From Lytechinus pictus (Eukaryota): a DNA stretch of 64,000 nucleotides. This document shows positions 9,669-57,672 of the stretch, piece by piece (positions within the stretch are counted from its first letter, which is position 1; each line of letters begins with the position of its first letter). Made by a program: the position numbers and the translations under genes. The stretch covers positions 28,086,001-28,150,000 of the forward strand of contig NC_087254.1 of NCBI RefSeq assembly GCF_037042905.1, written 5' to 3'. The notes under the pieces were generated by a model. That model was not told where the DNA came from. It saw only the letters and a program-made list of their open reading frames with translations, and ran no database searches.

Positions 9669-10006
9669 ATCTTCGGTAGATATGAAAGCATAAAGAGAAA
9701 TTATGTAGCGAGGCCTGGAGGAAATCTGTCAAATATTGTAATATTCTTTGGAAGAATTGAAAATGCCGAACTAAGCCAGAAAGTAGTACACCTACGCCAA
9801 ATATCCTTATGGAATCCCCTTAAATGTCACAATCTTGGTGATTTGAGAAAATTATGAATATGGTGTTTCAGTAATGGTCTGCAGTCTGGTAACATGTATG
9901 TAGATGAGGTAGCACCCCTTTGAATCTTATATAAGCTTCAAACAAAAGAAATAATAAAATAATAAGTCTAATTGTGCTGTACTATTATCTTTTCCATTTT
10001 CTACAG

Positions 10007-10936
10007 GTTTGGTTTCAGAACCGAAGAGCAAAATGGCGGAAGAAGGAGAATACGCGGAAAGGTCCTGGTCGCCCTGCCCACAACGCTCATCTTACATCGT
10101 GCAGCGGAGACCCAATTCCACCTGATGAGCTAGAGCGAAAAGAGAGAATGAAAGTAGAAAGGAAGATCAAGAAACAAAAGGAGAAGGCAGAGAAAGCACC
10201 AAATCGACATGTTTCTAGGCGAGTTGGTGGCAGCAGTGGGTCTGAAGGAAGCGCTGGTGGAGAGGGTGAGAAGAGAAGAAGAGACTCGTGTAGTTCTTCA
10301 ACAGGTTTATGTGTAGATGGACCGACGGGGTTTTTAACAGAAGGCCATCTGTCACAGAAAGACTTCATGGAAAGCTCGAGCGCTGAACCAAGCGAGGTAG
10401 ATTCAGAATGCATGGACAACATCAGTATTGATACATCGGAAGAACAGCGAAAACTTCCGGATTCGCCGCGGTTCAAATTAGCGGCACGAACTCTTTTAAA
10501 TCCACTGCGGGGTGTCGGACCGTTACCGCGGTTCGATGCGGATAAACTTCAAGACTGCGACGCCGCATCCGCATTTCATAGTTCGTTTAGCATCGACAGA
10601 CTTCTGTCTCGCCAACCGGAGCAGCACCCGGATATGAAACCAGGAACTGTTGCGGCAGCCGCTGCTGCTGCTGCCCTCTGGCCCGAATTCTGCCCGAGCT
10701 ATGCCCTAGCAGCACCAAACCCTCTTGCATGGGGTGCCCTCACTACCTTTGGGTTCCCGAGAATGTGGGCCGGTCTTACGGCAGATCGATTAGCCGGGTG
10801 CTTACGGGCCAACAGTCAGCAATTAGGCCTACTTGATGCATGGAGGGAGAGAAAGACAATGAGTGTCGAGGCACTAAGGAAGAAAGCACAAGAACATAAA
10901 GAGGCGTTGAGCAAAAATGATCTAAGCGATGGGTGA
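10007..10936 (+). CDS. Uncx: Terminal coding exon of an Uncx/unc-4 paired-like (PRD-class, Q50) homeobox gene
   Basis: Polypyrimidine tract and acceptor (tttccattttctacag|GTTTGG) at the classic PRD-class phase-0 intron between homeodomain residues Q46 and V47. The exon encodes helix 3 (VWFQNRRAKWRKKE) followed by the Uncx/unc-4-specific motif NTRKGPGRPAHNAHLTSCSGDPIPPDEL, an eh1-like FSIDRLL (10586-10606), a poly-Ala run and a C-terminal OAR-like motif. Stop TGA ends at 10936. The ORF-track start at 9974 is intronic. Confidence 0.93.
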   Translation, partial: VWFQNRRAKWRKKENTRKGPGRPAHNAHLTSCSGDPIPPDELERKERMKVERKIKKQKEKAEKAPNRHVSRRVGGSSGSEGSAGGEGEKRRRDSCSSSTGLCVDGPTGFLTEGHLSQKDFMESSSAEPSEVDSECMDNISIDTSEEQRKLPDSPRFKLAARTLLNPLRGVGPLPRFDADKLQDCDAASAFHSSFSIDRLLSRQPEQHPDMKPGTVAAAAAAAALWPEFCPSYALAAPNPLAWGALTTFGFPRMWAGLTADRLAGCLRANSQQLGLLDAWRERKTMSVEALRKKAQEHKEALSKNDLSDG

Positions 10937-21640: not shown

Positions 21641-22932
21641 CGCAGCATTCGATACGATTGATCATCAACTGCTGCTACAAAGAATGAGTACTTATTTCGG
21701 AATCAAAGGAAGTGTTCTCCGGTGGTTTTCTTCCTACCTGGAAAAGAGATCGCATGCTGTCAAGATTGAAAACGCTACATCAGGATTATCTCATGATGAG
21801 CAAGGGGTTCCTCAAGGGTCCGTCATCGGACCACTTACCTTTACAACGTACACTGCCCCTATCAATGACATTATAAGATCTCATGGTGTTGATGTAATGT
21901 TATATGCAGATGACACACAAATGTATATTGTCTTCAATCAATGTGATCGCCAGGTTTCAGTTGAAATACTGAATGCCTGCATCGTTGATATTAGGAGTTG
22001 GGCAACCAAAAACAAACTGTCTCTTAATGATGAAAAAACAGAACTTATACATTTCACTTCGATGTTTCGTCCAGAAATAAGTATGATTGATGTTAGGGTT
22101 GGCAACAATCATGTTGCTCCTGCTGGCAATGCTAAAAACTTAGGGGTTATATTTGATAGACATATCAATATGAAAGAGCAGATTAGTTCTATCTGCAAAT
22201 CTGCCATGATAACAATCAGATGTATCAGTCGAATAAGAGGGTTTCTGAATAAAGAGGCAACAAAAAGCCTGGTCCATGCATTTTGTCACCAGTCGAATCG
22301 ACTCATGTAATAGCTTGCTATTTGGTCTTCCCAAAAAAGACATACACCGTATACAGATGCTGCAGAATATTGCAGCTAGACTAGTAACTCGCACTCCTAG
22401 ACAACACGGCATTACCAGTACCCTGAAGAAATTACATTGGCTTTCTGTTGAAAAGCGCATCACATTTAAGATTATTTTTTTAGTTTTTAAAGCTCAGCAT
22501 GGCTTATCTCCATCATACTTGTCCAATTTACTAAATGATTACAACCCACCCCGTAACCTTCGATCAAGCAAACGGGTATACTTCTCCAAATTCCCAAAAC
22601 CCACACAAGCTTTTATGGTAGCAGATCATTTGCTGTAGCTGGACCAACCCTTTGGAACAAATTACCCCTACATATCAGACAGGCATCCACTTATTCAACT
22701 TTCAAATCCTTACTAAAACCCATCTTTTCCGAAACTCATAACTAGGTGTAGTATAGGTAATTATTTTATAGGTAATAATTGTAAGTTTAAATATTAAGTA
22801 ATTCTGTAATTAACAAGTCTATTTTCTTTTTTTGTAGTATAATGTACTTTGTATCCTTTATTGTAAAGCGCATAGAGAAACTTTCAGTTTATTATGCGCT
22901 ATATAAGAGAAGTATTATTATTATTATTATTA
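21641..22932 (+). mobile_element. 5'-truncated non-LTR retrotransposon (L2/CR1 group), ORF2 reverse transcriptase C-terminal half plus 3' UTR
   Basis: RT motifs AAFDTIDH, GVPQGSVIGP, YADDTQ, LNDEKTE, KNLGVIFD, LVHAF/VTSRID, LHWL, RNLRSS and [15 protein letters not shown]. Frameshifts near 22281-22284, ~22575 and ~22715. 3' stem-loop AGCGCATA (22867-22874)/TATGCGCT (22893-22900) and a (TAT)n tail to ~22932, typical of L2-like ends. No target-site duplication (TSD) seen. Confidence 0.92.
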
Positions 22933-37200: not shown

Positions 37201-40200
37201 CATGATTATTATCAATTCATGTCTGATGAAAAATGTTAAAGCCAGTTTCAATTTCATCAATTCTGGATTATTTATTTAAAAAGATGTCGTTGAGAACCGC
37301 TAATCCATCGTTCAAGAAAATTCATCAATTCCGCTTCCATTTCGCTACCAGGATCTAGCAACGACGAATCAAATGACAGATGTGAAGCCTGTTTATTTTA
37401 AGTTAGGTGAGGGAGCCATTTATAAAATGACAAAATCAAATATTTTTTAACTCACTCGGGAAAACTATATTATTACATTATGGCCCAATGAAGTATGCAG
37501 CAATTTATGTACATTGAAATGAAGAAAAAAAATAAAGATTGACAAAAATGTGGCCCTCGCTCAAGAGATATCACGTTTGTCTCTTTATCTTTTTATAATG
37601 TTCAAGTTCGATGAATAAAGTGTTCCTTTGCAGATTATATGCAAGTTTCGGAAATTTTAGACTCCGATTTAGGAAGTGTTCCGTTGTCTCACAATGTTTT
37701 CATTTTGTTTCCCTTGTATTTTATTGTGGTATTACTATCAAAATATAGTGGTTCTTCTTTTTAGAATGTGGTTCGCATTTGCGCCAACGCATCGTCCCCA
37801 GCCGTATTTATTCATTTAAAATAAACATTCATTTTCTTCCATTTCCACAAAATACTGTTTTTCATCATAGATTATATACAATATCATTTTCATAAAAAAA
37901 TATAACTATATAACAGATTTGTTAACAGAATGATTTCTTTCAATTAGTTACATAGTTAGCGAGGCGAGTTGGATATCACAAACCCCCCCCCCCCCCACCA
38001 CACTCATTTGAAATGAACACATTACTTAATTACATTTATGTCACTCGTGTACGTCGTCAGAGAAAAGGCACTGTTTATATTACTCAATACGATAATTATT
38101 TCATATATTTTTGTAAAAGAGATTTGTATTAAGATGAGACACCGACAGCAAACTGTAAATGTTAATAGATTCAATGGATAAATTATTCTTTAACTTAGCC
38201 TATATATGCGGTGGTTCATTTACATAATTATTCTGCATGAATTATAGTTCAGATTTTAATCCATCATTTTTTTTGAAAGCCAACTAATCACTCAAACCAA
38301 CTTTCATCCGTTTTGTGTGAAAACAAAAACAATTTACTAAGGTCTTACTACTTAATTGAAAAAAATTATTGTTCTTCAAAGATTTCATGTTGTATTAAGA
38401 GTAGTTAAATGAACCTTTACGAACATGAATCCTCTGTAATTTATCATATTTTTTATAATAATTACCTTCTCCAATTGGATTTATTTAATATTTTTTATAG
38501 CTCCTATCCATTCATTTTCCCGTTTCCTTCATAAACAACAATTTTTCTAAAAACAAATATGGTCGAGTTGCATTCGTTTGTCTCTTGTCCTACTTCTTCT
38601 ATCACTTTTCAAGGACTTACGGTCCCTTTATTTCTTTTTAAGAACCCCACATGTTACTACCTGTCTCCCATCGGAAACTCCCTCCACCAAAATGTTTAGC
38701 TGTACAGCATTTCGGGTCATTATCGGCCAAGATTATAAGCCTGTTTCCCCCCGTTCACTCACCGAGCCCCCCTCTTGGTCTCTCGCGTTCGATCTCGCGC
38801 TAGAGCTGCATGACCGCGGGCGATCCAGTGCTAGTCAAATACAACACTCGGCAAGATGATACCGTCACAAACGACTTCTCATATCCTTACTTGCTTCCCT
38901 CTTTTCCATTTCCGTGCCAGATCCATCTAATAAAAATTCATGCCCTCTCCCAATTTAACTACCTTTTAATTCTCCCTTCCCCTCCATGGGCGCTGTTTAA
39001 TTCCCGCCAACAGAATATTGGCCATTTTGTATTTGTTTGCACGCGATCTTGTGTCTTATGTTGTTCTATGATCGGTGTGTCGCCCCCATGCCCCAGCAGT
39101 ATCTTTCTCCTATTCATTATACACAGAAAGCTCTTAGAGGTCCCCGGGGTGCTGGTGAGACGGATAAATCGAATACGGGGGGGGGGGGGGTATTGACATT
39201 ACCACTGGTTGGTAAAGAAACAAATTATACATGAAGTTGTCAACTTTGCTTGATGGGTCACTTAATAATGATATTACCCCAGAGCTATAAATTTGATTGG
39301 AAGATGTGTAATTTGCTTTGTTATTCAATTCATATTGCACTACAAAAGGCCTCTTGAGGCATCGTTCGGTTTATAATTAACTGATAGTTCATTGCAAGAT
39401 CAAAATGTAATAATAAGGCGGATTGATTGCATTAGACATCAAGTTTGCTTCCACAATATGATTGTATATTTATTTTTTTTAATAACCGGGATGTTTTATT
39501 AATAATTATTTTGTTTCAGTGTGAAGGAAATTAACTCGTTGAATACTGATTCTTATTAAAGTTTTTTGAAGTTCACTTTCCAATTTTTGCATTTTTTGAT
39601 ATACATGGTTTTTATTCAAATCTTCTGTTAATCAACTATTTCTTTCAAATTGTAATGTTTTTTCTTGAATACAGTGTTCAGCTCAGCACCAAGTCGTAGC
39701 TTTGGAGATATATTGCAGAATCAAACAATACTTTTATCTTGTTGAATTTGTTGAGTTGTAGCATATTCATTACTCCTTTTTATTCTGTTTTTCTTTTCCA
39801 TTTGTATCGAGTAAAGCTTGTGAATATATAGCTTGACATCCATTAAATTATCTCTTCTTGAGTGAACATTGAAAGTCATCATCCTATTTATATTCCGCGC
39901 CTTCTACTCGGGAAATCGAATTCAGCAGCCGGAGCAAATCTCCGCCCGGGGCAACTCCTAACACCTTCCGTCAAAACGGTCGAGTTAATTGTGTGTGTGT
40001 ATCCGGTATTAATACGCCCCGTGTAATAGGCTAATCAAAGCTTGTATCCACGGATAATGAAGGGCGACTCGAGGCCAATGATGCGGCGGTTGCTAGGGGG
40101 AGTGGTTAGCTGGCAACTGCAAATGTTCTTTGGACATAGGTGTCAGGTAATGGGTTTGATTTAATGTTAATGATGGACAGGTCGATAATGATGTCTCTTA

Positions 40201-40262
40201 CAATAATACGTGGATGATGGCCAAAGGAAAAAAAAAGAGACTTGATAATGCGTATCCACATT

Positions 40263-40347
40263 GATGGTGATGATGATGATGATGATGATGATGATAATAA
40301 TGCTGATGGAGGCTGCTGCTGCTGCTGATGATGATGATGGTGATGAT
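40263..40347. repeat. (GAT)n/(GCT)n compound microsatellite
   Basis: Visible trinucleotide runs. Confidence 0.9.
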
Positions 40348-40417
40348 TACCATACCAATGGTTGTAAAGGCGATTAAAGTGTTGAAAAAGACATGATGTG
40401 ACTTGATGATGGTGATC

Positions 40418-53068: not shown

Positions 53069-55940
53069 TTTAATGAAAATCAACAAGAAATTTCATACGT
53101 CATGAATTTGGGGTTGTGATAATAATTTTTTTTTTTTGTTGAAAAATTGGACTTGGAAAAAAACCCTTTTCCATCTTCATCTAGTGGTTCCTAAGTCAGA
53201 CTCTTCAATGTTGAATTGTTGGATTTCTTGAATGAAAACATATGTTACACCAGTCCTGCAGATTGAAAAAATAGAGAAAGAAAATCAATGAATTTAAATT
53301 AAAATTGTCGTGATTTATAAAACATAAATGTTTTAAGAAAAGTGAGACTATACATATATATGTTTCTTCAACACATAACAGGAAATCTTACTTCTTCTAA
53401 TTATAAACTTGTACTTCTATAAAGCATATCACTTAAACCTGTTCTATGCAGTTTACATACCACTCTCCATTATAACTACATGTACTCTATGAAAAAAATT
53501 GTCAAAGATTTCTCATAAATATAAATATATGAATCAACATATGTAAATTATATAAATAGTCAGAATTAAAGTTGATATGCTTTGTTGCACAGAATATTTT
53601 GATCTGTGATTAAAAACGACACTAACTATAATCTAAAAACAAAATTGAAATGGGTTTTTCAAAGGCAGGTCTATTTGTTGCCAAAAAAAATGTGAACAAC
53701 CTCCATTATTACAAATATTCACTAATTAACTCACTCATATAACTGCTGTAGGTTGTATTTCTCTTTGTGGTCTAGTCGCTGTTCTAGTAGGCCTACTTCA
53801 TTAATTATTTATCATCATCAATCACCTCCATGGAAATTGTAAAACTGCATCATCCTATTGGACAAAATGTAAAATAACAAGATTTTTTAAAAATCGTAAA
53901 TCTACAAATATGAAATATGAATATCACACTATTAAAGAATGAATAAAATGAAATTTGTAAAATATGAAAAATAAATATTGCTTTGTTTATAAACAAATAG
54001 GAAATAAAAAGGCCATTTAATTACCAGTAGATCAAGGACATGACCTTACCGGTATTTTATAAATTTGCCCAAGGTACATAACTTTTGGCATTGGGTCTAT
54101 TTTAGACTCGAGAGCCTGTATATTTAAGAAGTGTATATTCGTTACAGATCCTACCTCTTTGTGGCTCGGATTATTTTTATTTAATGTAAACATGGTTAAC
54201 ATTCAATGCATGTAATGTATCTGTAATTTTGTATGGGTTAGTTTAATTTTTATACCTGGATGAGAATCTGCAAAATGATGCATGAACTTATGATCATCAT
54301 CTTGAACCATATAGGTAGACCTCTATACTGTTTTTCTTGTTCTTCAAACTCAACCTGTTTGTGAAAAAAAAAGAGAGAACAATAATAAGAAGTGATCTTT
54401 TTCGTATGTATAGGGGGAGGGGTTTGGGAAAGAGCTGAAATGTGAAAACCTTCATCAAAAAGAGAATTGCATGACATCCTTCAATTTTACTTTAGAAAAT
54501 GAACAAAACGGCCCTAGGTAATATTGGTCGCTTCTGGCCCTCGCTTTCTGAATTTTAGGTTTCTCTAAATTTTTTCACAAGTCTGCCCCCCCACCCCCCC
54601 CCCCCAAAAAAAAAATTATAATCTGGATCTTTTTATTTCCGAATCTTATTTCATTTGATTTTAACATAATTTCATAATCTCATGCACTAGTTCTGGATCT
54701 ATTTGTAAGAAAGTATAGATCTAGTCCAACGAGACTCAGTTCTGTGCGACAGCATTCATGTATCTAAATTAGGTCTAGATCTAATGTTAGACTAACGATG
54801 GACTCTCGATCTATCTAGACCTAGAAAGTAAAGCTTCGGTTCTAAACCGAGATCTAGACCCTATATCGGTTTAGAAATTTTTGATGTCTGACTCTTACTT
54901 TTATTCCTGGCTAAGACTTCATTGCCATTATTGACCGAGAGTAGATCTAGATCTAGTCCTTGGTCCACTGACAGTCATACTCGTACATGTAAATGGAGTC
55001 GTTTAGGCACAGACCTAGATCTAGGCCTAAATTACAGACCTAGATCATAAGTGTTGAGGGTTGGGAAAGTATAAGTTAGACTAGATTTGAATTCGGTAGG
55101 CCCAGTTCTTAATAGCATCGATGAATAAATAAAAGTAAAGTAGCCTAGATCTAAGTATAAAGTAAGTAGGGCCTAGGAATAGGATAGGATTAAGAAGATC
55201 TAGGTCCTAGATCTTTTGTTTTGATAATAAAACAAACATGCAGCGCAGCATGTTATTTCTAAGACCGAGTCGAACTATATTTATAAATAACAATAAGAGT
55301 TAAAATGGAGGGGGGGGGGGCTAAATGCAGAAGCCTGAAGTTATGCAAAATAAATTTGATATCTGAAACAAAGTGAGGAATGACTCAATGAGGATTGACA
55401 CAATGACACTTGACAGGCGTATCTTCAGAAGTTCAGTTCATCCACACTCCGCTTCACAGTTTATTCCTGACTGAGTCTCGATCTACTGAAGATAGATGTA
55501 GATCTCCCGGCCTCTAGATCTAACGTTACAGTGTACAAAAAGAAGCCTCATTCTTCTTGTTTTAATCAATCGTGGGTTGGTCCTTGTTGGAGGTGAACCA
55601 AACCAGCCCGATTATCTCTCGATTCCCAGCCGGCTAGGACCCCGTACAAAATACATGTGGTTAACACAGCGGCATAACGGCATAACCACAACACTGCAAG
55701 CAACATACATACAGGCTGCACTGGGCGACGATGACAATCTAACTTCAATTTCAAAGACCAAATTCTGCTTTCCTTTAACAGAGGAATGATAGCAAAATCT
55801 CTAATTTGTTAAACAAATAACCTAAGATCACAAAATACAGTGTGAAATGTGTAAATAGTCCACTGAATTCATGTGGTTATATCAATTTATACGTACTCAC
55901 CGGAGTGTTCGTAGGTCCATTTTGTGTGTGGAAAGAAAAG
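53069..55940 (-). ncRNA. Predicted spliced transcript with short exons (5'TOP-type lncRNA / snoRNA host / small-ORF gene)
   Basis: Predicted exons: ~55940-55901 (CCG|gtgagt), 54354-54256 (ttttcacaaacag| ... CAG|gtataa), 54115-54050 (tacag| ... CCG|gtaagg), 53854-53735 (ccaatag| ... |gtgagt), 53486-53392 (ttttcatag| ... |gtaaga) and 53255 onward (ttttttcaatctgcag|). ATTAAA at 53074-53069. Confidence 0.6.
55555..55739 (-). ncRNA. Candidate intronic structured RNA (H/ACA snoRNA/scaRNA-like)
   Basis: GC-rich island with a CCCAG/CTGGG closing stem, two internal hairpins, H-box-like AGATAA (55617-55612), a 3' hairpin and ACA at 55560-55558. Confidence 0.4.
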
Positions 55941-56190
55941 TTTCAGAATGAATAAATTAGATGACGTAATGAGGTCAAATGAATAATTAATTCTGTAACA
56001 CGATACCACTAGTATCGATGACAAAGAATCGGGGAAATCGCGTATTAATGACGCTCTTAGCCAATGAAAAGGCCGGATTATGAATATCTTCATGCTCATG
56101 AATGTCAATGAGGGCTTATTTTTGTCTTCAAATGATCGCGGTAGGCGGAGCCTAATCCCATTTGTTTTGTGCTGAACGCGCACGCAGCTT
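55930..56190 (-). promoter_or_regulatory. Housekeeping-type promoter of the minus-strand transcript
   Basis: Pyrimidine initiator CTTTTCTTTCC (55940-55930), CRE/ATF-like TGACGTAA (55962), DRE-like TATCGATG (56013), CCAAT (56061), GC-box-like GGCGGAG (56144). The region is CpG-rich. Confidence 0.55.
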
Positions 56191-57377
56191 TCGGTCTAGT
56201 AATATATTATAAGGTCTTTGATAAATACAGTCACCAGCCGCGTATCCTATACTATAGGGAGACTTGATTATTTTGTTATGTAGTAAATTGATCTTTTTTT
56301 TTATATACTCCCTTGTGGTTCCTCAAATTGTTTCCACTGTCTCATAAAATCTGGCCAATAAAGGCAATGTCCCTATAAGCATTCTCTCAGGAAGGAGCCC
56401 CCATGATCTCGGCGAATAACCATCGGTATTAAAGGTGTTGTATATAAAAAGAGAAAATTAGAAGGACCATTCCGTGAAAGGAGGGGCTCCGAGGAGGAAC
56501 CATACTCCAGTTACAAACCTGACGCCATTTTGTTTTCTTGTTCTATCTTACCCAACCGATGCAAATTGATGAGGAGCTCACAGTGTAGCCCCGAGCAATA
56601 TTTACATTTGCAAAATGTCATCTCTGCTCAAACACGAAGACAAGTGTGTACACGGTCTCTTGTTCAGCTCTGTCGAGTGAAAACAACCTCCGGGCGGCCA
56701 AGAGTTGCAACGCAATAGTGAAAAAATAAAGTAACAAGTCTTGCAAAATGCAACTAATAAAAAGCGATTAGAAGATTACCCGAGTCTAAGATGGAGAGAG
56801 GAAAAAATCGAGCCGCGGCCATATTCTATTCCCCATTTGCACTTTGTTGCCTTCGAGCGTTGCAAATTAGCGCTAAAAGACAGTCAATATTGATAGTGAT
56901 AACTTTAATTTGAGGGAAACTTTGTGACAGCCTGCGAAATGCTTTACGGCGATCAGGAAAAATTTTCAAGGCAATCGTTGTTCAAATAAAATGACAAAAA
57001 TCAGGAGGCCGACTAGGGCGTGAACGCGGGAGAGGAAAATATTGGAGTTGAAAGAGGAGAGGGGGAGAAAATAGATGTAGCTATTTTATTGGCCGTGAAT
57101 GAATTTGTCGTGTTTACATGCATTGTGGAGATGTGAGATGACATCGGCGGAGATGTGTTATTTGTTCGGAATATTATGTTATTAATTTGATTTAGTGAAA
57201 TAAGTGAATTACATTCGAATCGCGCGGGAATCAGAGGAGATGAAGGATGGTGATAAATGGGAACGGTGTCGTCTGCGCTAAGTTGATGATCTCATTACGT
57301 TATTACGTTCACGCGTGAATTTGATTTGTGTGGGAATCAAGGTCCCGCAAGAAGTCAGAAAATCATGTTAGCTTATC

Positions 57378-57393
57378 TGGCGCCCTCTAATGG
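57378..57393 (-). promoter_or_regulatory. CTCF-like motif
   Basis: The minus strand reads CCATTAGAGGGCGCCA, close to the CTCF core consensus CCACTAGAGGGCGC. Confidence 0.45.
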
Positions 57394-57672
57394 TTCAACC
57401 TGCTAGCTTCTCTGAAGTAATCTCTGGAGACATTAGGGCCTATAACATTAATTTCTTCAAGTTTGACCTTCTTTAAATTTGATTTCAAACCTCTGCTGCA
57501 TGTTGCTTGCTTTAACCTGTTTACAATTATTCTTATTTCATTTAGTTCATTTTCAGACTTTTCAGCATTTACTGGCCAGAGAACCAGAGAGATTCAGTGT
57601 AAAGTATTTTTTTATACAATAAAGACTAAACAATTATACTTTAAAAAGTCAATAGCTCATGTAAAAATAATA

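What the first reader, a model, noticed from the sequence alone, without database searches (positions are those of the whole stretch)
53069..56190. Hidden six-exon minus-strand gene with a 5'TOP-like start and no long ORF (snoRNA-host-like)
Seen: five donors and five acceptors, all canonical GT-AG and on the same strand, define short exons at ~55940-55901, 54354-54256 (99 nt), 54115-54050 (66 nt), 53854-53735 (120 nt), 53486-53392 (95 nt) and 53255-~53060. Exon 1 starts at CTTTTCTTTCC followed by AAAATGG, downstream of CRE-, DRE-, CCAAT- and GC-box-like sites. All spliced frames terminate early; the first ATG (55920) gives only the 25-aa MDLRTLRLSLKNKKNSIEVYLYGSR*. Known: non-coding snoRNA host genes (GAS5/UHG type) are 5'TOP/TCT-promoter genes with short, poorly conserved, NMD-prone exons. 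Inference: this is such a gene, and its payload would be the intron-1 RNA.
Basis: partly seen in the sequence, partly recalled or inferred. Interest (0 to 1): 0.8.

Follow-up and report, generated by a model that had tools for sequence, protein, structure and literature searches.

The report
Spliced non-coding RNA, no snoRNA cargo
The predicted hidden gene is real: a short, spliced, apparently non-coding minus-strand RNA in a sea urchin genome. It has four observed exons rather than six, no detectable snoRNA in its introns and no shown 5'TOP start, so it is an ordinary long non-coding RNA.

Summary
RNA-seq reads and transcriptome contigs confirm minus-strand GT-AG splicing at three junctions: 55901|54354, 54256|53854 and 53735|53255. 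The same splicing is seen in a closely related species ("organism B").

The spliced RNA is about 0.5-0.8 kb and has no ATG ORF above 67 aa. It has no Pfam match. A common 2-nt indel in exon 2 shifts the reading frame, so a non-coding RNA is the best reading.

The snoRNA-host reading is not supported:
- Rfam finds nothing.
- No box C/D candidate exists.
- The intron-1 "island" folds no better than shuffled sequence (z -0.95).
- The island's centre is replaced by 9 nt in the RNA reads, and no organism B run is listed as holding it, although those runs hold the exons.

The 5'TOP start is unproven. The exon-1 contig runs to 56220, 280 nt upstream of the proposed start.

Verdict: an ordinary spliced intergenic lncRNA. 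Interest is low.

The parts
55901..56220 (-). Exon 1, with its donor GT at 55900-55899. The 5' end is unmapped. RNA contigs cover 55899-56220.
   Evidence: junction 54352->55899 (cut +2). X1 contig 8 and X5 contig 16 are laid on 55899/55863-56220. X19 stranded depth is 2.4 at 55968-56161.
54355..55900 (-). Intron 1 (1546 nt). It contains the 185-nt 'island' (55555-55739) and a TAGATCTA palindrome cluster (54716-55522). No snoRNA was detected.
   Evidence: 55656-55706 is replaced by 9 nt in 6 X19 reads.
54256..54354 (-). Exon 2 (99 nt). It is polymorphic: a 2-nt deletion at 54324-54325, and A>C at 54285 in all reads.
   Evidence: joints, tables 3 and 4.
53855..54255 (-). Observed intron 2 (401 nt).
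   Evidence: joint 53853->54255 (cut +1), with 6 X19 reads from 6 starts, plus X1 and X5 contigs.
53735..53854 (-).
   Evidence: joints on both sides.
53256..53734 (-). Observed intron 3 (479 nt).
   Evidence: joint 53254->53734 (cut +1) in an X5 contig of depth 48.5. X19 and X20 depth is zero over 53252-53639.
53050..53255 (-). An ATTAAA signal lies at 53074-53069. The exact 3' end was not mapped.
   Evidence: (low depth at 53058-53251).
55960..56200 (-). CpG-rich promoter-like patch with CRE-like, ATCGAT, inverted CCAAT and GC-box-like motifs. It is transcribed at a low level on both strands.
   Evidence: both read orientations at 55968-56220.

Best explanation
This is an independent RNA polymerase II transcription unit on the minus strand. 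It produces a short (about 0.5-0.8 kb), four-exon, probably polyadenylated long intergenic non-coding RNA.

Shown: splicing at three canonical GT-AG introns; strand; expression in two closely related sea urchin species; absence of a long or frame-stable ORF; absence of any recognisable snoRNA or miRNA in the introns.

Inferred:
- Transcription starts dispersedly in or near the small CpG-rich, CRE/CCAAT-bearing patch at 55960-56220.
- The 3' end forms after ATTAAA at 53074-53069.
- Any function lies in the act of transcription or in the mature lncRNA itself, not in an intronic cargo.
- With many short upstream ORFs and early stops, the RNA is expected to be NMD-prone and of low abundance. The observed depth of about 10 reads or fewer over the exons in 6% of a 21-Gb run fits this.
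For:: three minus-strand GT-AG junctions in raw stranded reads (X19) and in contigs of two species (X1, X5). Gene-body reads are all of one orientation. Coverage is zero beyond 56356 in all four runs, so the signal is RNA and not contaminating DNA.

the longest ATG ORF is 25 aa with the short exon 1 and 67 aa with the long exon 1.

the ORF peptides have no Pfam family.

a 2-nt indel in exon 2 is the major form in organism A reads and the minor form in organism B. It changes the frame, so there is no coding constraint.

no Rfam family, no C/D candidate, and no window with a folding z-score below -3.4. The best z-scores lie in the palindrome cluster.

the locus is single-copy within the window.

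CpG o/e peaks at 1.42 at 56000-56199, and the gene body is CpG-poor.

no ORF of 100 aa or more lies from about 51 kb to the window's end.
Against: Depth is low, and only one read-laying run and four runs were available. The 5' and 3' ends were not mapped. The match of all runs ends abruptly at 56220, and the organism B contig continues for 201 nt of unmatched sequence, so an upstream exon or a structural difference from the reference is possible. Conservation beyond one closely related species (about 93-97% identity even in introns) could not be tested, so function versus neutral transcription is open. Divergent invertebrate snoRNAs can escape Rfam and simple box scans.
Confidence: 0.75

Rival explanations
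1. This is a snoRNA (or other small-RNA) host gene of the GAS5/UHG type. The exons are disposable, and an intron releases a guide RNA that the tools here failed to recognise.
For: The gene architecture is compatible: short exons, early stops, and a pyrimidine-rich motif at a candidate start. Intron 1 has a GC-richer patch at 55555-55780. Earlier notes of this scan report many real intronic snoRNAs elsewhere in this genome.
Against: There is no Rfam hit at gathering score, and only chance-level hits at E<=10. No C box/D box pair with a terminal stem exists on either strand. The island has z -0.95, and its putative 5' and 3' hairpin halves have z -0.05 and -0.72. The putative ACA lies about 9-14 nt after a short hairpin that has no internal pocket. 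In 6 X19 reads, 51 nt of the island centre are replaced by 9 nt, and no run holds more than 0.60 of the island's words. None of the ten organism B runs that hold the exons is listed as holding the island. No intron bin exceeds exon depth in rRNA-depleted RNA, and no pile-up of read ends was reported.
Confidence: 0.07
2. This is a micropeptide gene. The RNA encodes a small hydrophobic peptide. The candidates are the 25-aa peptide starting MMIISSC, and, in the 2-nt-deletion allele, a 49-aa fusion from the first ATG at 55920.
For: In the deletion allele (8 of 10 X19 reads and the X1 contig), the first ATG opens a 49-aa ORF spanning exons 1 to 3 and containing a hydrophobic stretch. The 25-aa part is encoded in both alleles.
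Against: The frame differs between alleles and between the two species, because the deletion is minor in organism B. Pfam gives no match. ORFs of 25-49 aa are expected by chance in any 0.5-0.8 kb RNA. If exon 1 is long, several upstream ATGs precede this ORF.
Confidence: 0.06
3. These are untranslated or alternative exons of a larger gene whose other exons lie outside 53050-56220. For example, an upstream exon could be joined near 56220.
For: The match of all four runs stops at exactly 56220. The organism B contig carries 201 more nt that do not lie on the stretch. An AG lies at 56217-56216, after a pyrimidine-rich run.
Against: No joint from 56220 to anywhere within 56221-57500 was listed, and coverage there is zero. 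56222-56221 is AT, not AG. No joint leaves the terminal exon, which carries ATTAAA. No protein-like ORF lies within several kb.
Confidence: 0.08

Closest known systems
Long intergenic non-coding RNAs (lincRNAs) of animals
   Same: It is a Pol II-type spliced transcript with canonical GT-AG introns, few short exons, low abundance, no long ORF and exon sequence that tolerates indels. It sits in a gene-poor stretch about 42 kb from a homeobox-gene exon.
   Different: Nothing that was tested differs. Function, ends and deep conservation are unknown.
snoRNA host genes GAS5 / UHG / SNHG family (5'TOP non-coding hosts; from general knowledge, and PMC7719101 for the point that hosts are distinguishable only by their payload)
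   Same: It has short, ORF-poor, spliced exons, and a C-plus-pyrimidine motif near a candidate start.
   Different: The defining payload is missing, because no intron contains a detectable snoRNA. The TOP motif is not shown to be the cap site, and transcripts extend upstream of it. PMC7719101 reports that SNHGs cannot be told from other lncRNAs once the payload is ignored, so exon and promoter look-alikes carry no weight.
Box H/ACA snoRNA (proposed for 55555-55739 by scan note s1-323407)
   Same: An ANANNA-like hexamer (AGAUAA) and an ACA triplet can be found in the stretch.
   Different: The 5' part is 123 nt and multibranched rather than a single pocket hairpin. The 3' hairpin is about 35 nt, has no pocket, and leaves a 9-14-nt tail before ACA. 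Folding energy equals that of shuffles. The centre is deleted in the transcribed alleles.

Membership tests
snoRNA host gene (GAS5/UHG/SNHG type) | At least one intron encodes a box C/D or H/ACA snoRNA | tested here: not met
   Rfam finds no hits. The C/D scan is empty on both strands. The folding z-scan gives no value below -3.4. The island has z -0.95. No intronic depth peak or read-end pile-up is seen.
snoRNA host gene (GAS5/UHG/SNHG type) | Payload more conserved than the exons | tested here: not met
   Organism B runs hold exon words (shares 0.11-0.14 of the locus), but none is listed as holding the island. The island centre is replaced by 9 nt in organism A reads. The two species are very close, so this test is weak.
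snoRNA host gene (GAS5/UHG/SNHG type) | Transcription starts at the C of a 5' terminal oligopyrimidine tract | tested here: inconclusive
   The motif is present at 55940. However, the exon-1 contig and same-strand reads extend to 56220. Such motifs occur 0.72 times per kb per strand. There are no cap-site data.
snoRNA host gene (GAS5/UHG/SNHG type) | Spliced transcript without a conserved long ORF | tested here: met
lincRNA | Transcript longer than 200 nt, spliced, with no ORF above about 100 aa and no protein-family match | tested here: met
   The four exons sum to 465-745 nt. The longest ATG ORF is 67 aa. Pfam is empty. Junctions are seen.
lincRNA | Does not overlap a protein-coding gene | tested here: inconclusive
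   No ORF of 100 aa or more and no coding-like ORF lies between about 51 kb and 64 kb. No genome annotation was available to check.
Box H/ACA snoRNA (island 55555-55739) | Hairpin-H box-hairpin-ACA layout, with pockets and ACA 3 nt from the 3' end, stable and conserved | tested here: not met
   (z -0.95, -0.05, -0.72; no pocket; long tail before ACA). (centre replaced, net 42-nt deletion, in reads). (no H/ACA family hit at E<=10).
smORF / micropeptide gene | Reading frame preserved among alleles and species | tested here: not met
   The 2-nt deletion at 54324-54325 is in 8 of 10 X19 reads and in the X1 contig, but accounts for only 26.8 of 406.7 depth in organism B. It switches the first ORF between 25 and 49 aa.

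The most novel reading that the evidence does not exclude
The RNA is a payload-free 5'TOP/TCT-promoter lncRNA, that is, a growth-regulated non-coding transcript built like a snoRNA host but without cargo. Alternatively, it encodes a 25-49-aa hydrophobic micropeptide. In either case the mature spliced RNA, not an intron, would be the functional product.
Probability: 0.08. Interest if true: 0.4.

Novelty: new member of a known kind. Interest (0 to 1): 0.15.

Why it matters
It shows that a sequence-only reader located real splice sites of an unannounced gene: 3 of 5 predicted introns' donors and acceptors are in use. It also shows that 'host-gene-like' exon and promoter features do not predict a snoRNA cargo. 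Biologically it adds one more low-abundance spliced lincRNA, expressed in two closely related sea urchins and lying in the gene-poor flank of a homeobox gene. That is useful for annotation but not surprising.

Tried and rejected
- Rfam was run at gathering score on the whole window and at E<=10 on 52500-56500. It gave only chance-level hits, and the weak snoZ221 hit straddles the verified exon 2 donor.
- A box C/D scan (RUGAUGA ... CUGA with a terminal stem of 4 bp or more) on both strands of 52900-56400 found nothing.
- I folded the island, its two putative H/ACA halves and the well-covered 3' part of intron 1 (54414-54560). None beats shuffles.
- A sliding 110-nt z-score scan on both strands gave a minimum of -3.3, and the best windows lie in the palindrome cluster.
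- A self-BLAST of the locus against the window found no other copy of 53000-56400.
- Pfam on the short ORFs found nothing.
- The bacterial-type promoter/terminator scan is irrelevant to a eukaryote and was ignored.
- A second run search with the island alone found only organism A holders, at 0.40-0.60 of the words.
- Comparison with more distant echinoid genomes could not be done, because the collections offered hold no eukaryotic genomes that can be searched by DNA.

Full report
**What is in the sequence.** So are the CTTTTCTTTCC run at 55940-55930 and the ATG at 55920. Upstream lie four motifs: a CRE-like ACGTCA (55967), ATCGAT (56019), an inverted CCAAT (56065) and a GC-box-like CTCCGCC (56150). 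They sit in the only CpG-rich patch next to the gene, with CpG o/e 1.42 at 56000-56199 against 0-0.5 in most of the gene body. Earlier notes of this scan identify the genome as a sea urchin.

**Transcript evidence.** It used two rRNA-depleted stranded raw-read runs of the same species (X19, X20), one contig set of that species (X1) and one of a sister taxon ("organism B", X5).

Three joints with CT..AC ends on the + strand, which is GT..AG on the minus strand, were found:
- 55901|54354: 1 X19 read and an X1 contig.
- 54256|53854: 6 X19 reads from 6 start positions, plus X1 and X5 contigs.
- 53735|53255: an X5 contig of depth 48.5.

X19 reads over 53058-54803 and 55192-55967 are exclusively first-mate-on-plus, which fits a minus-strand RNA. 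Beyond 56356 all four runs have zero depth, so the signal is RNA rather than DNA carry-over.

The gene is therefore real, but the observed model has four exons:
- Exon 1: up to 56220 down to 55901.
- Exon 2: 54354-54256.
- Exon 3: 53854-53735.
- Terminal exon: 53255 to about 53050.

Exon 5 has no reads at all in X19 or X20. The only X19 read near exon 3 carries 12 mismatches. Nine weaker joints were not printed, so rare inclusion cannot be excluded.

**Coding potential.** It is about 745-800 nt if exon 1 starts near 56220-56275. Its longest ATG ORF is 25 aa or 67 aa respectively. None of the peptides matches Pfam.

A 2-nt deletion at 54324-54325 is present in 8 of 10 X19 reads and in the X1 contig. 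It accounts for only 26.8 of 406.7 depth in organism B. It fuses the first ORF to a second frame and gives 49 aa. A frame that flips between common alleles and between sister species argues against coding constraint.

**The 5' end.** The contig that abuts the exon-1 donor runs from 55899 to 56220 in both X1 (depth 40.5, against 101.6 for the spliced downstream contig) and X5. X19 has same-strand reads at 55968-56220, at about half the depth seen further downstream. X19 also has opposite-strand reads there.

At least part of the RNA therefore starts 280 nt or more upstream of the proposed TOP site. Low-level two-strand coverage over a CpG-rich patch fits dispersed or bidirectional initiation. 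C-plus-9-or-more-pyrimidine motifs occur 0.72 times per kb per strand in this window, so the motif alone is weak evidence. All runs stop matching at exactly 56220, and the organism B contig continues with 201 unmatched nt. This remains unexplained. It could be a structural difference from the reference, or a transcript end in organism A.

**The payload question.**
- Rfam gives nothing at gathering score in the whole window. In 52500-56500 it gives only chance-level hits. The one C/D-like hit (18.5 bits, E 2.4) straddles the verified exon-2 donor.
- A C box/D box/terminal-stem scan is empty on both strands.
- The 185-nt intron-1 island folds at -56.7 kcal/mol against -53.0 +/- 3.9 for shuffles (z -0.95). 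Its putative 5' and 3' H/ACA halves have z -0.05 and -0.72. The 3' hairpin is short, has no pocket, and leaves a 9-14-nt tail before ACA.
- A 110-nt sliding z-scan of both strands finds nothing below -3.4. The best windows lie in the TAGATCTA palindrome cluster.
- In six X19 reads, 55656-55706 is replaced by 9 nt, a net 42-nt deletion in the centre of the island. The X1 contig breaks at the same place.
- In a search with the island alone, no run holds more than 0.60 of its words. Only organism A runs are listed, although ten organism B runs hold the exons.
- In rRNA-depleted RNA, no intron bin exceeds exon depth, and no pile-up of read ends is reported.

PMC7719101 reports that snoRNA host genes cannot be distinguished from other lncRNAs once the payload is ignored. 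Exon and promoter resemblance therefore cannot carry the claim.

**Best explanation (confidence 0.75).** This is a low-abundance, four-exon, probably polyadenylated lincRNA. ATTAAA lies at 53074-53069. Transcription starts from a small CpG-rich CRE/CCAAT-type promoter patch. The RNA is expressed in two closely related sea urchins, and more in X19 than in X20. Splicing, strand and lack of ORF are shown. The promoter, the 3' end, NMD sensitivity and any function (cis effect of transcription, or a role of the mature RNA) are inferred.

**Rivals.**
- A host gene with an undetected small RNA: 0.07.
- A micropeptide gene: 0.06.
- Exons of a larger gene: 0.08.

**Limits.** Depth was low, at 10 reads or fewer per exon position in the 6% of X19 that was read. 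Only one closely related species was available, at about 93-97% identity even in introns. There are no cap-site or poly(A)-site data. No eukaryotic genome collection was available for orthologue alignment.

Noticed in passing
window 56220: In all four runs the match to the reference stops at exactly 56220, on both read orientations in X19. The organism B contig goes on for 201 nt that do not lie on 51700-57500. This could be a reference-specific insertion or haplotype difference, or a transcript end. It is unresolved.
   Followed up: partly
window 55656-55706: In 6 X19 reads, 51 nt in the centre of the intron-1 GC-rich island are replaced by 9 nt (a net 42-nt deletion). The X1 contig breaks at the same place. 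The reference segment contains a GTTATGCC tandem duplication.
   Followed up: partly
window 54716-55522: Seven of the window's nine TAGATCTA palindromes cluster in intron 1 (1.7 expected by chance for the whole window). Weak reads lie on both strands there, which suggests a dispersed repeat or MITE-like element.
   Followed up: partly
window 51325-52020: Two adjacent copies, about 77% identical, of a roughly 320-bp element. Contig depth is very high (450-800), reads lie on both strands and many ends are loose. This is an abundantly expressed interspersed repeat, not part of the gene.
   Followed up: partly
window 52476-53057: A repeat-rich stretch with long C/G homopolymers and a 72-nt unit repeated at 52511-52582 and 52741-52811. 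Reads there are mostly of the opposite orientation to the lncRNA.
   Followed up: no
window 9974-10936 (+): A long ORF beginning with the end of a homeodomain (WFQNRRAKWRKKE; Pfam Homeodomain, positions 45-57, E 0.005, below the cut-off because only the last helix is present). From memory it resembles an Unc-4/Uncx-type paired-like homeobox last exon. It lies about 42 kb from the lncRNA.
   Followed up: partly
window 21684-22638 (+): A reverse-transcriptase ORF fragment (Pfam RVT_1, E 1.2e-14), so a LINE-type retroelement remnant.
   Followed up: partly
window 40100-42800: A long tandem array. It translates on the minus strand as VDVEIVT repeats. It shows extreme GC skew (-0.37 to -0.55) and AT skew.
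   Followed up: no
window 54414-54565: The 3' part of intron 1 has read depth (6 X19 reads at 54502; X5 contig depth 95.9) close to that of exon 2. It could be intron retention, an alternative start or an alternative acceptor. It has no structure (z +1.7).
   Followed up: partly
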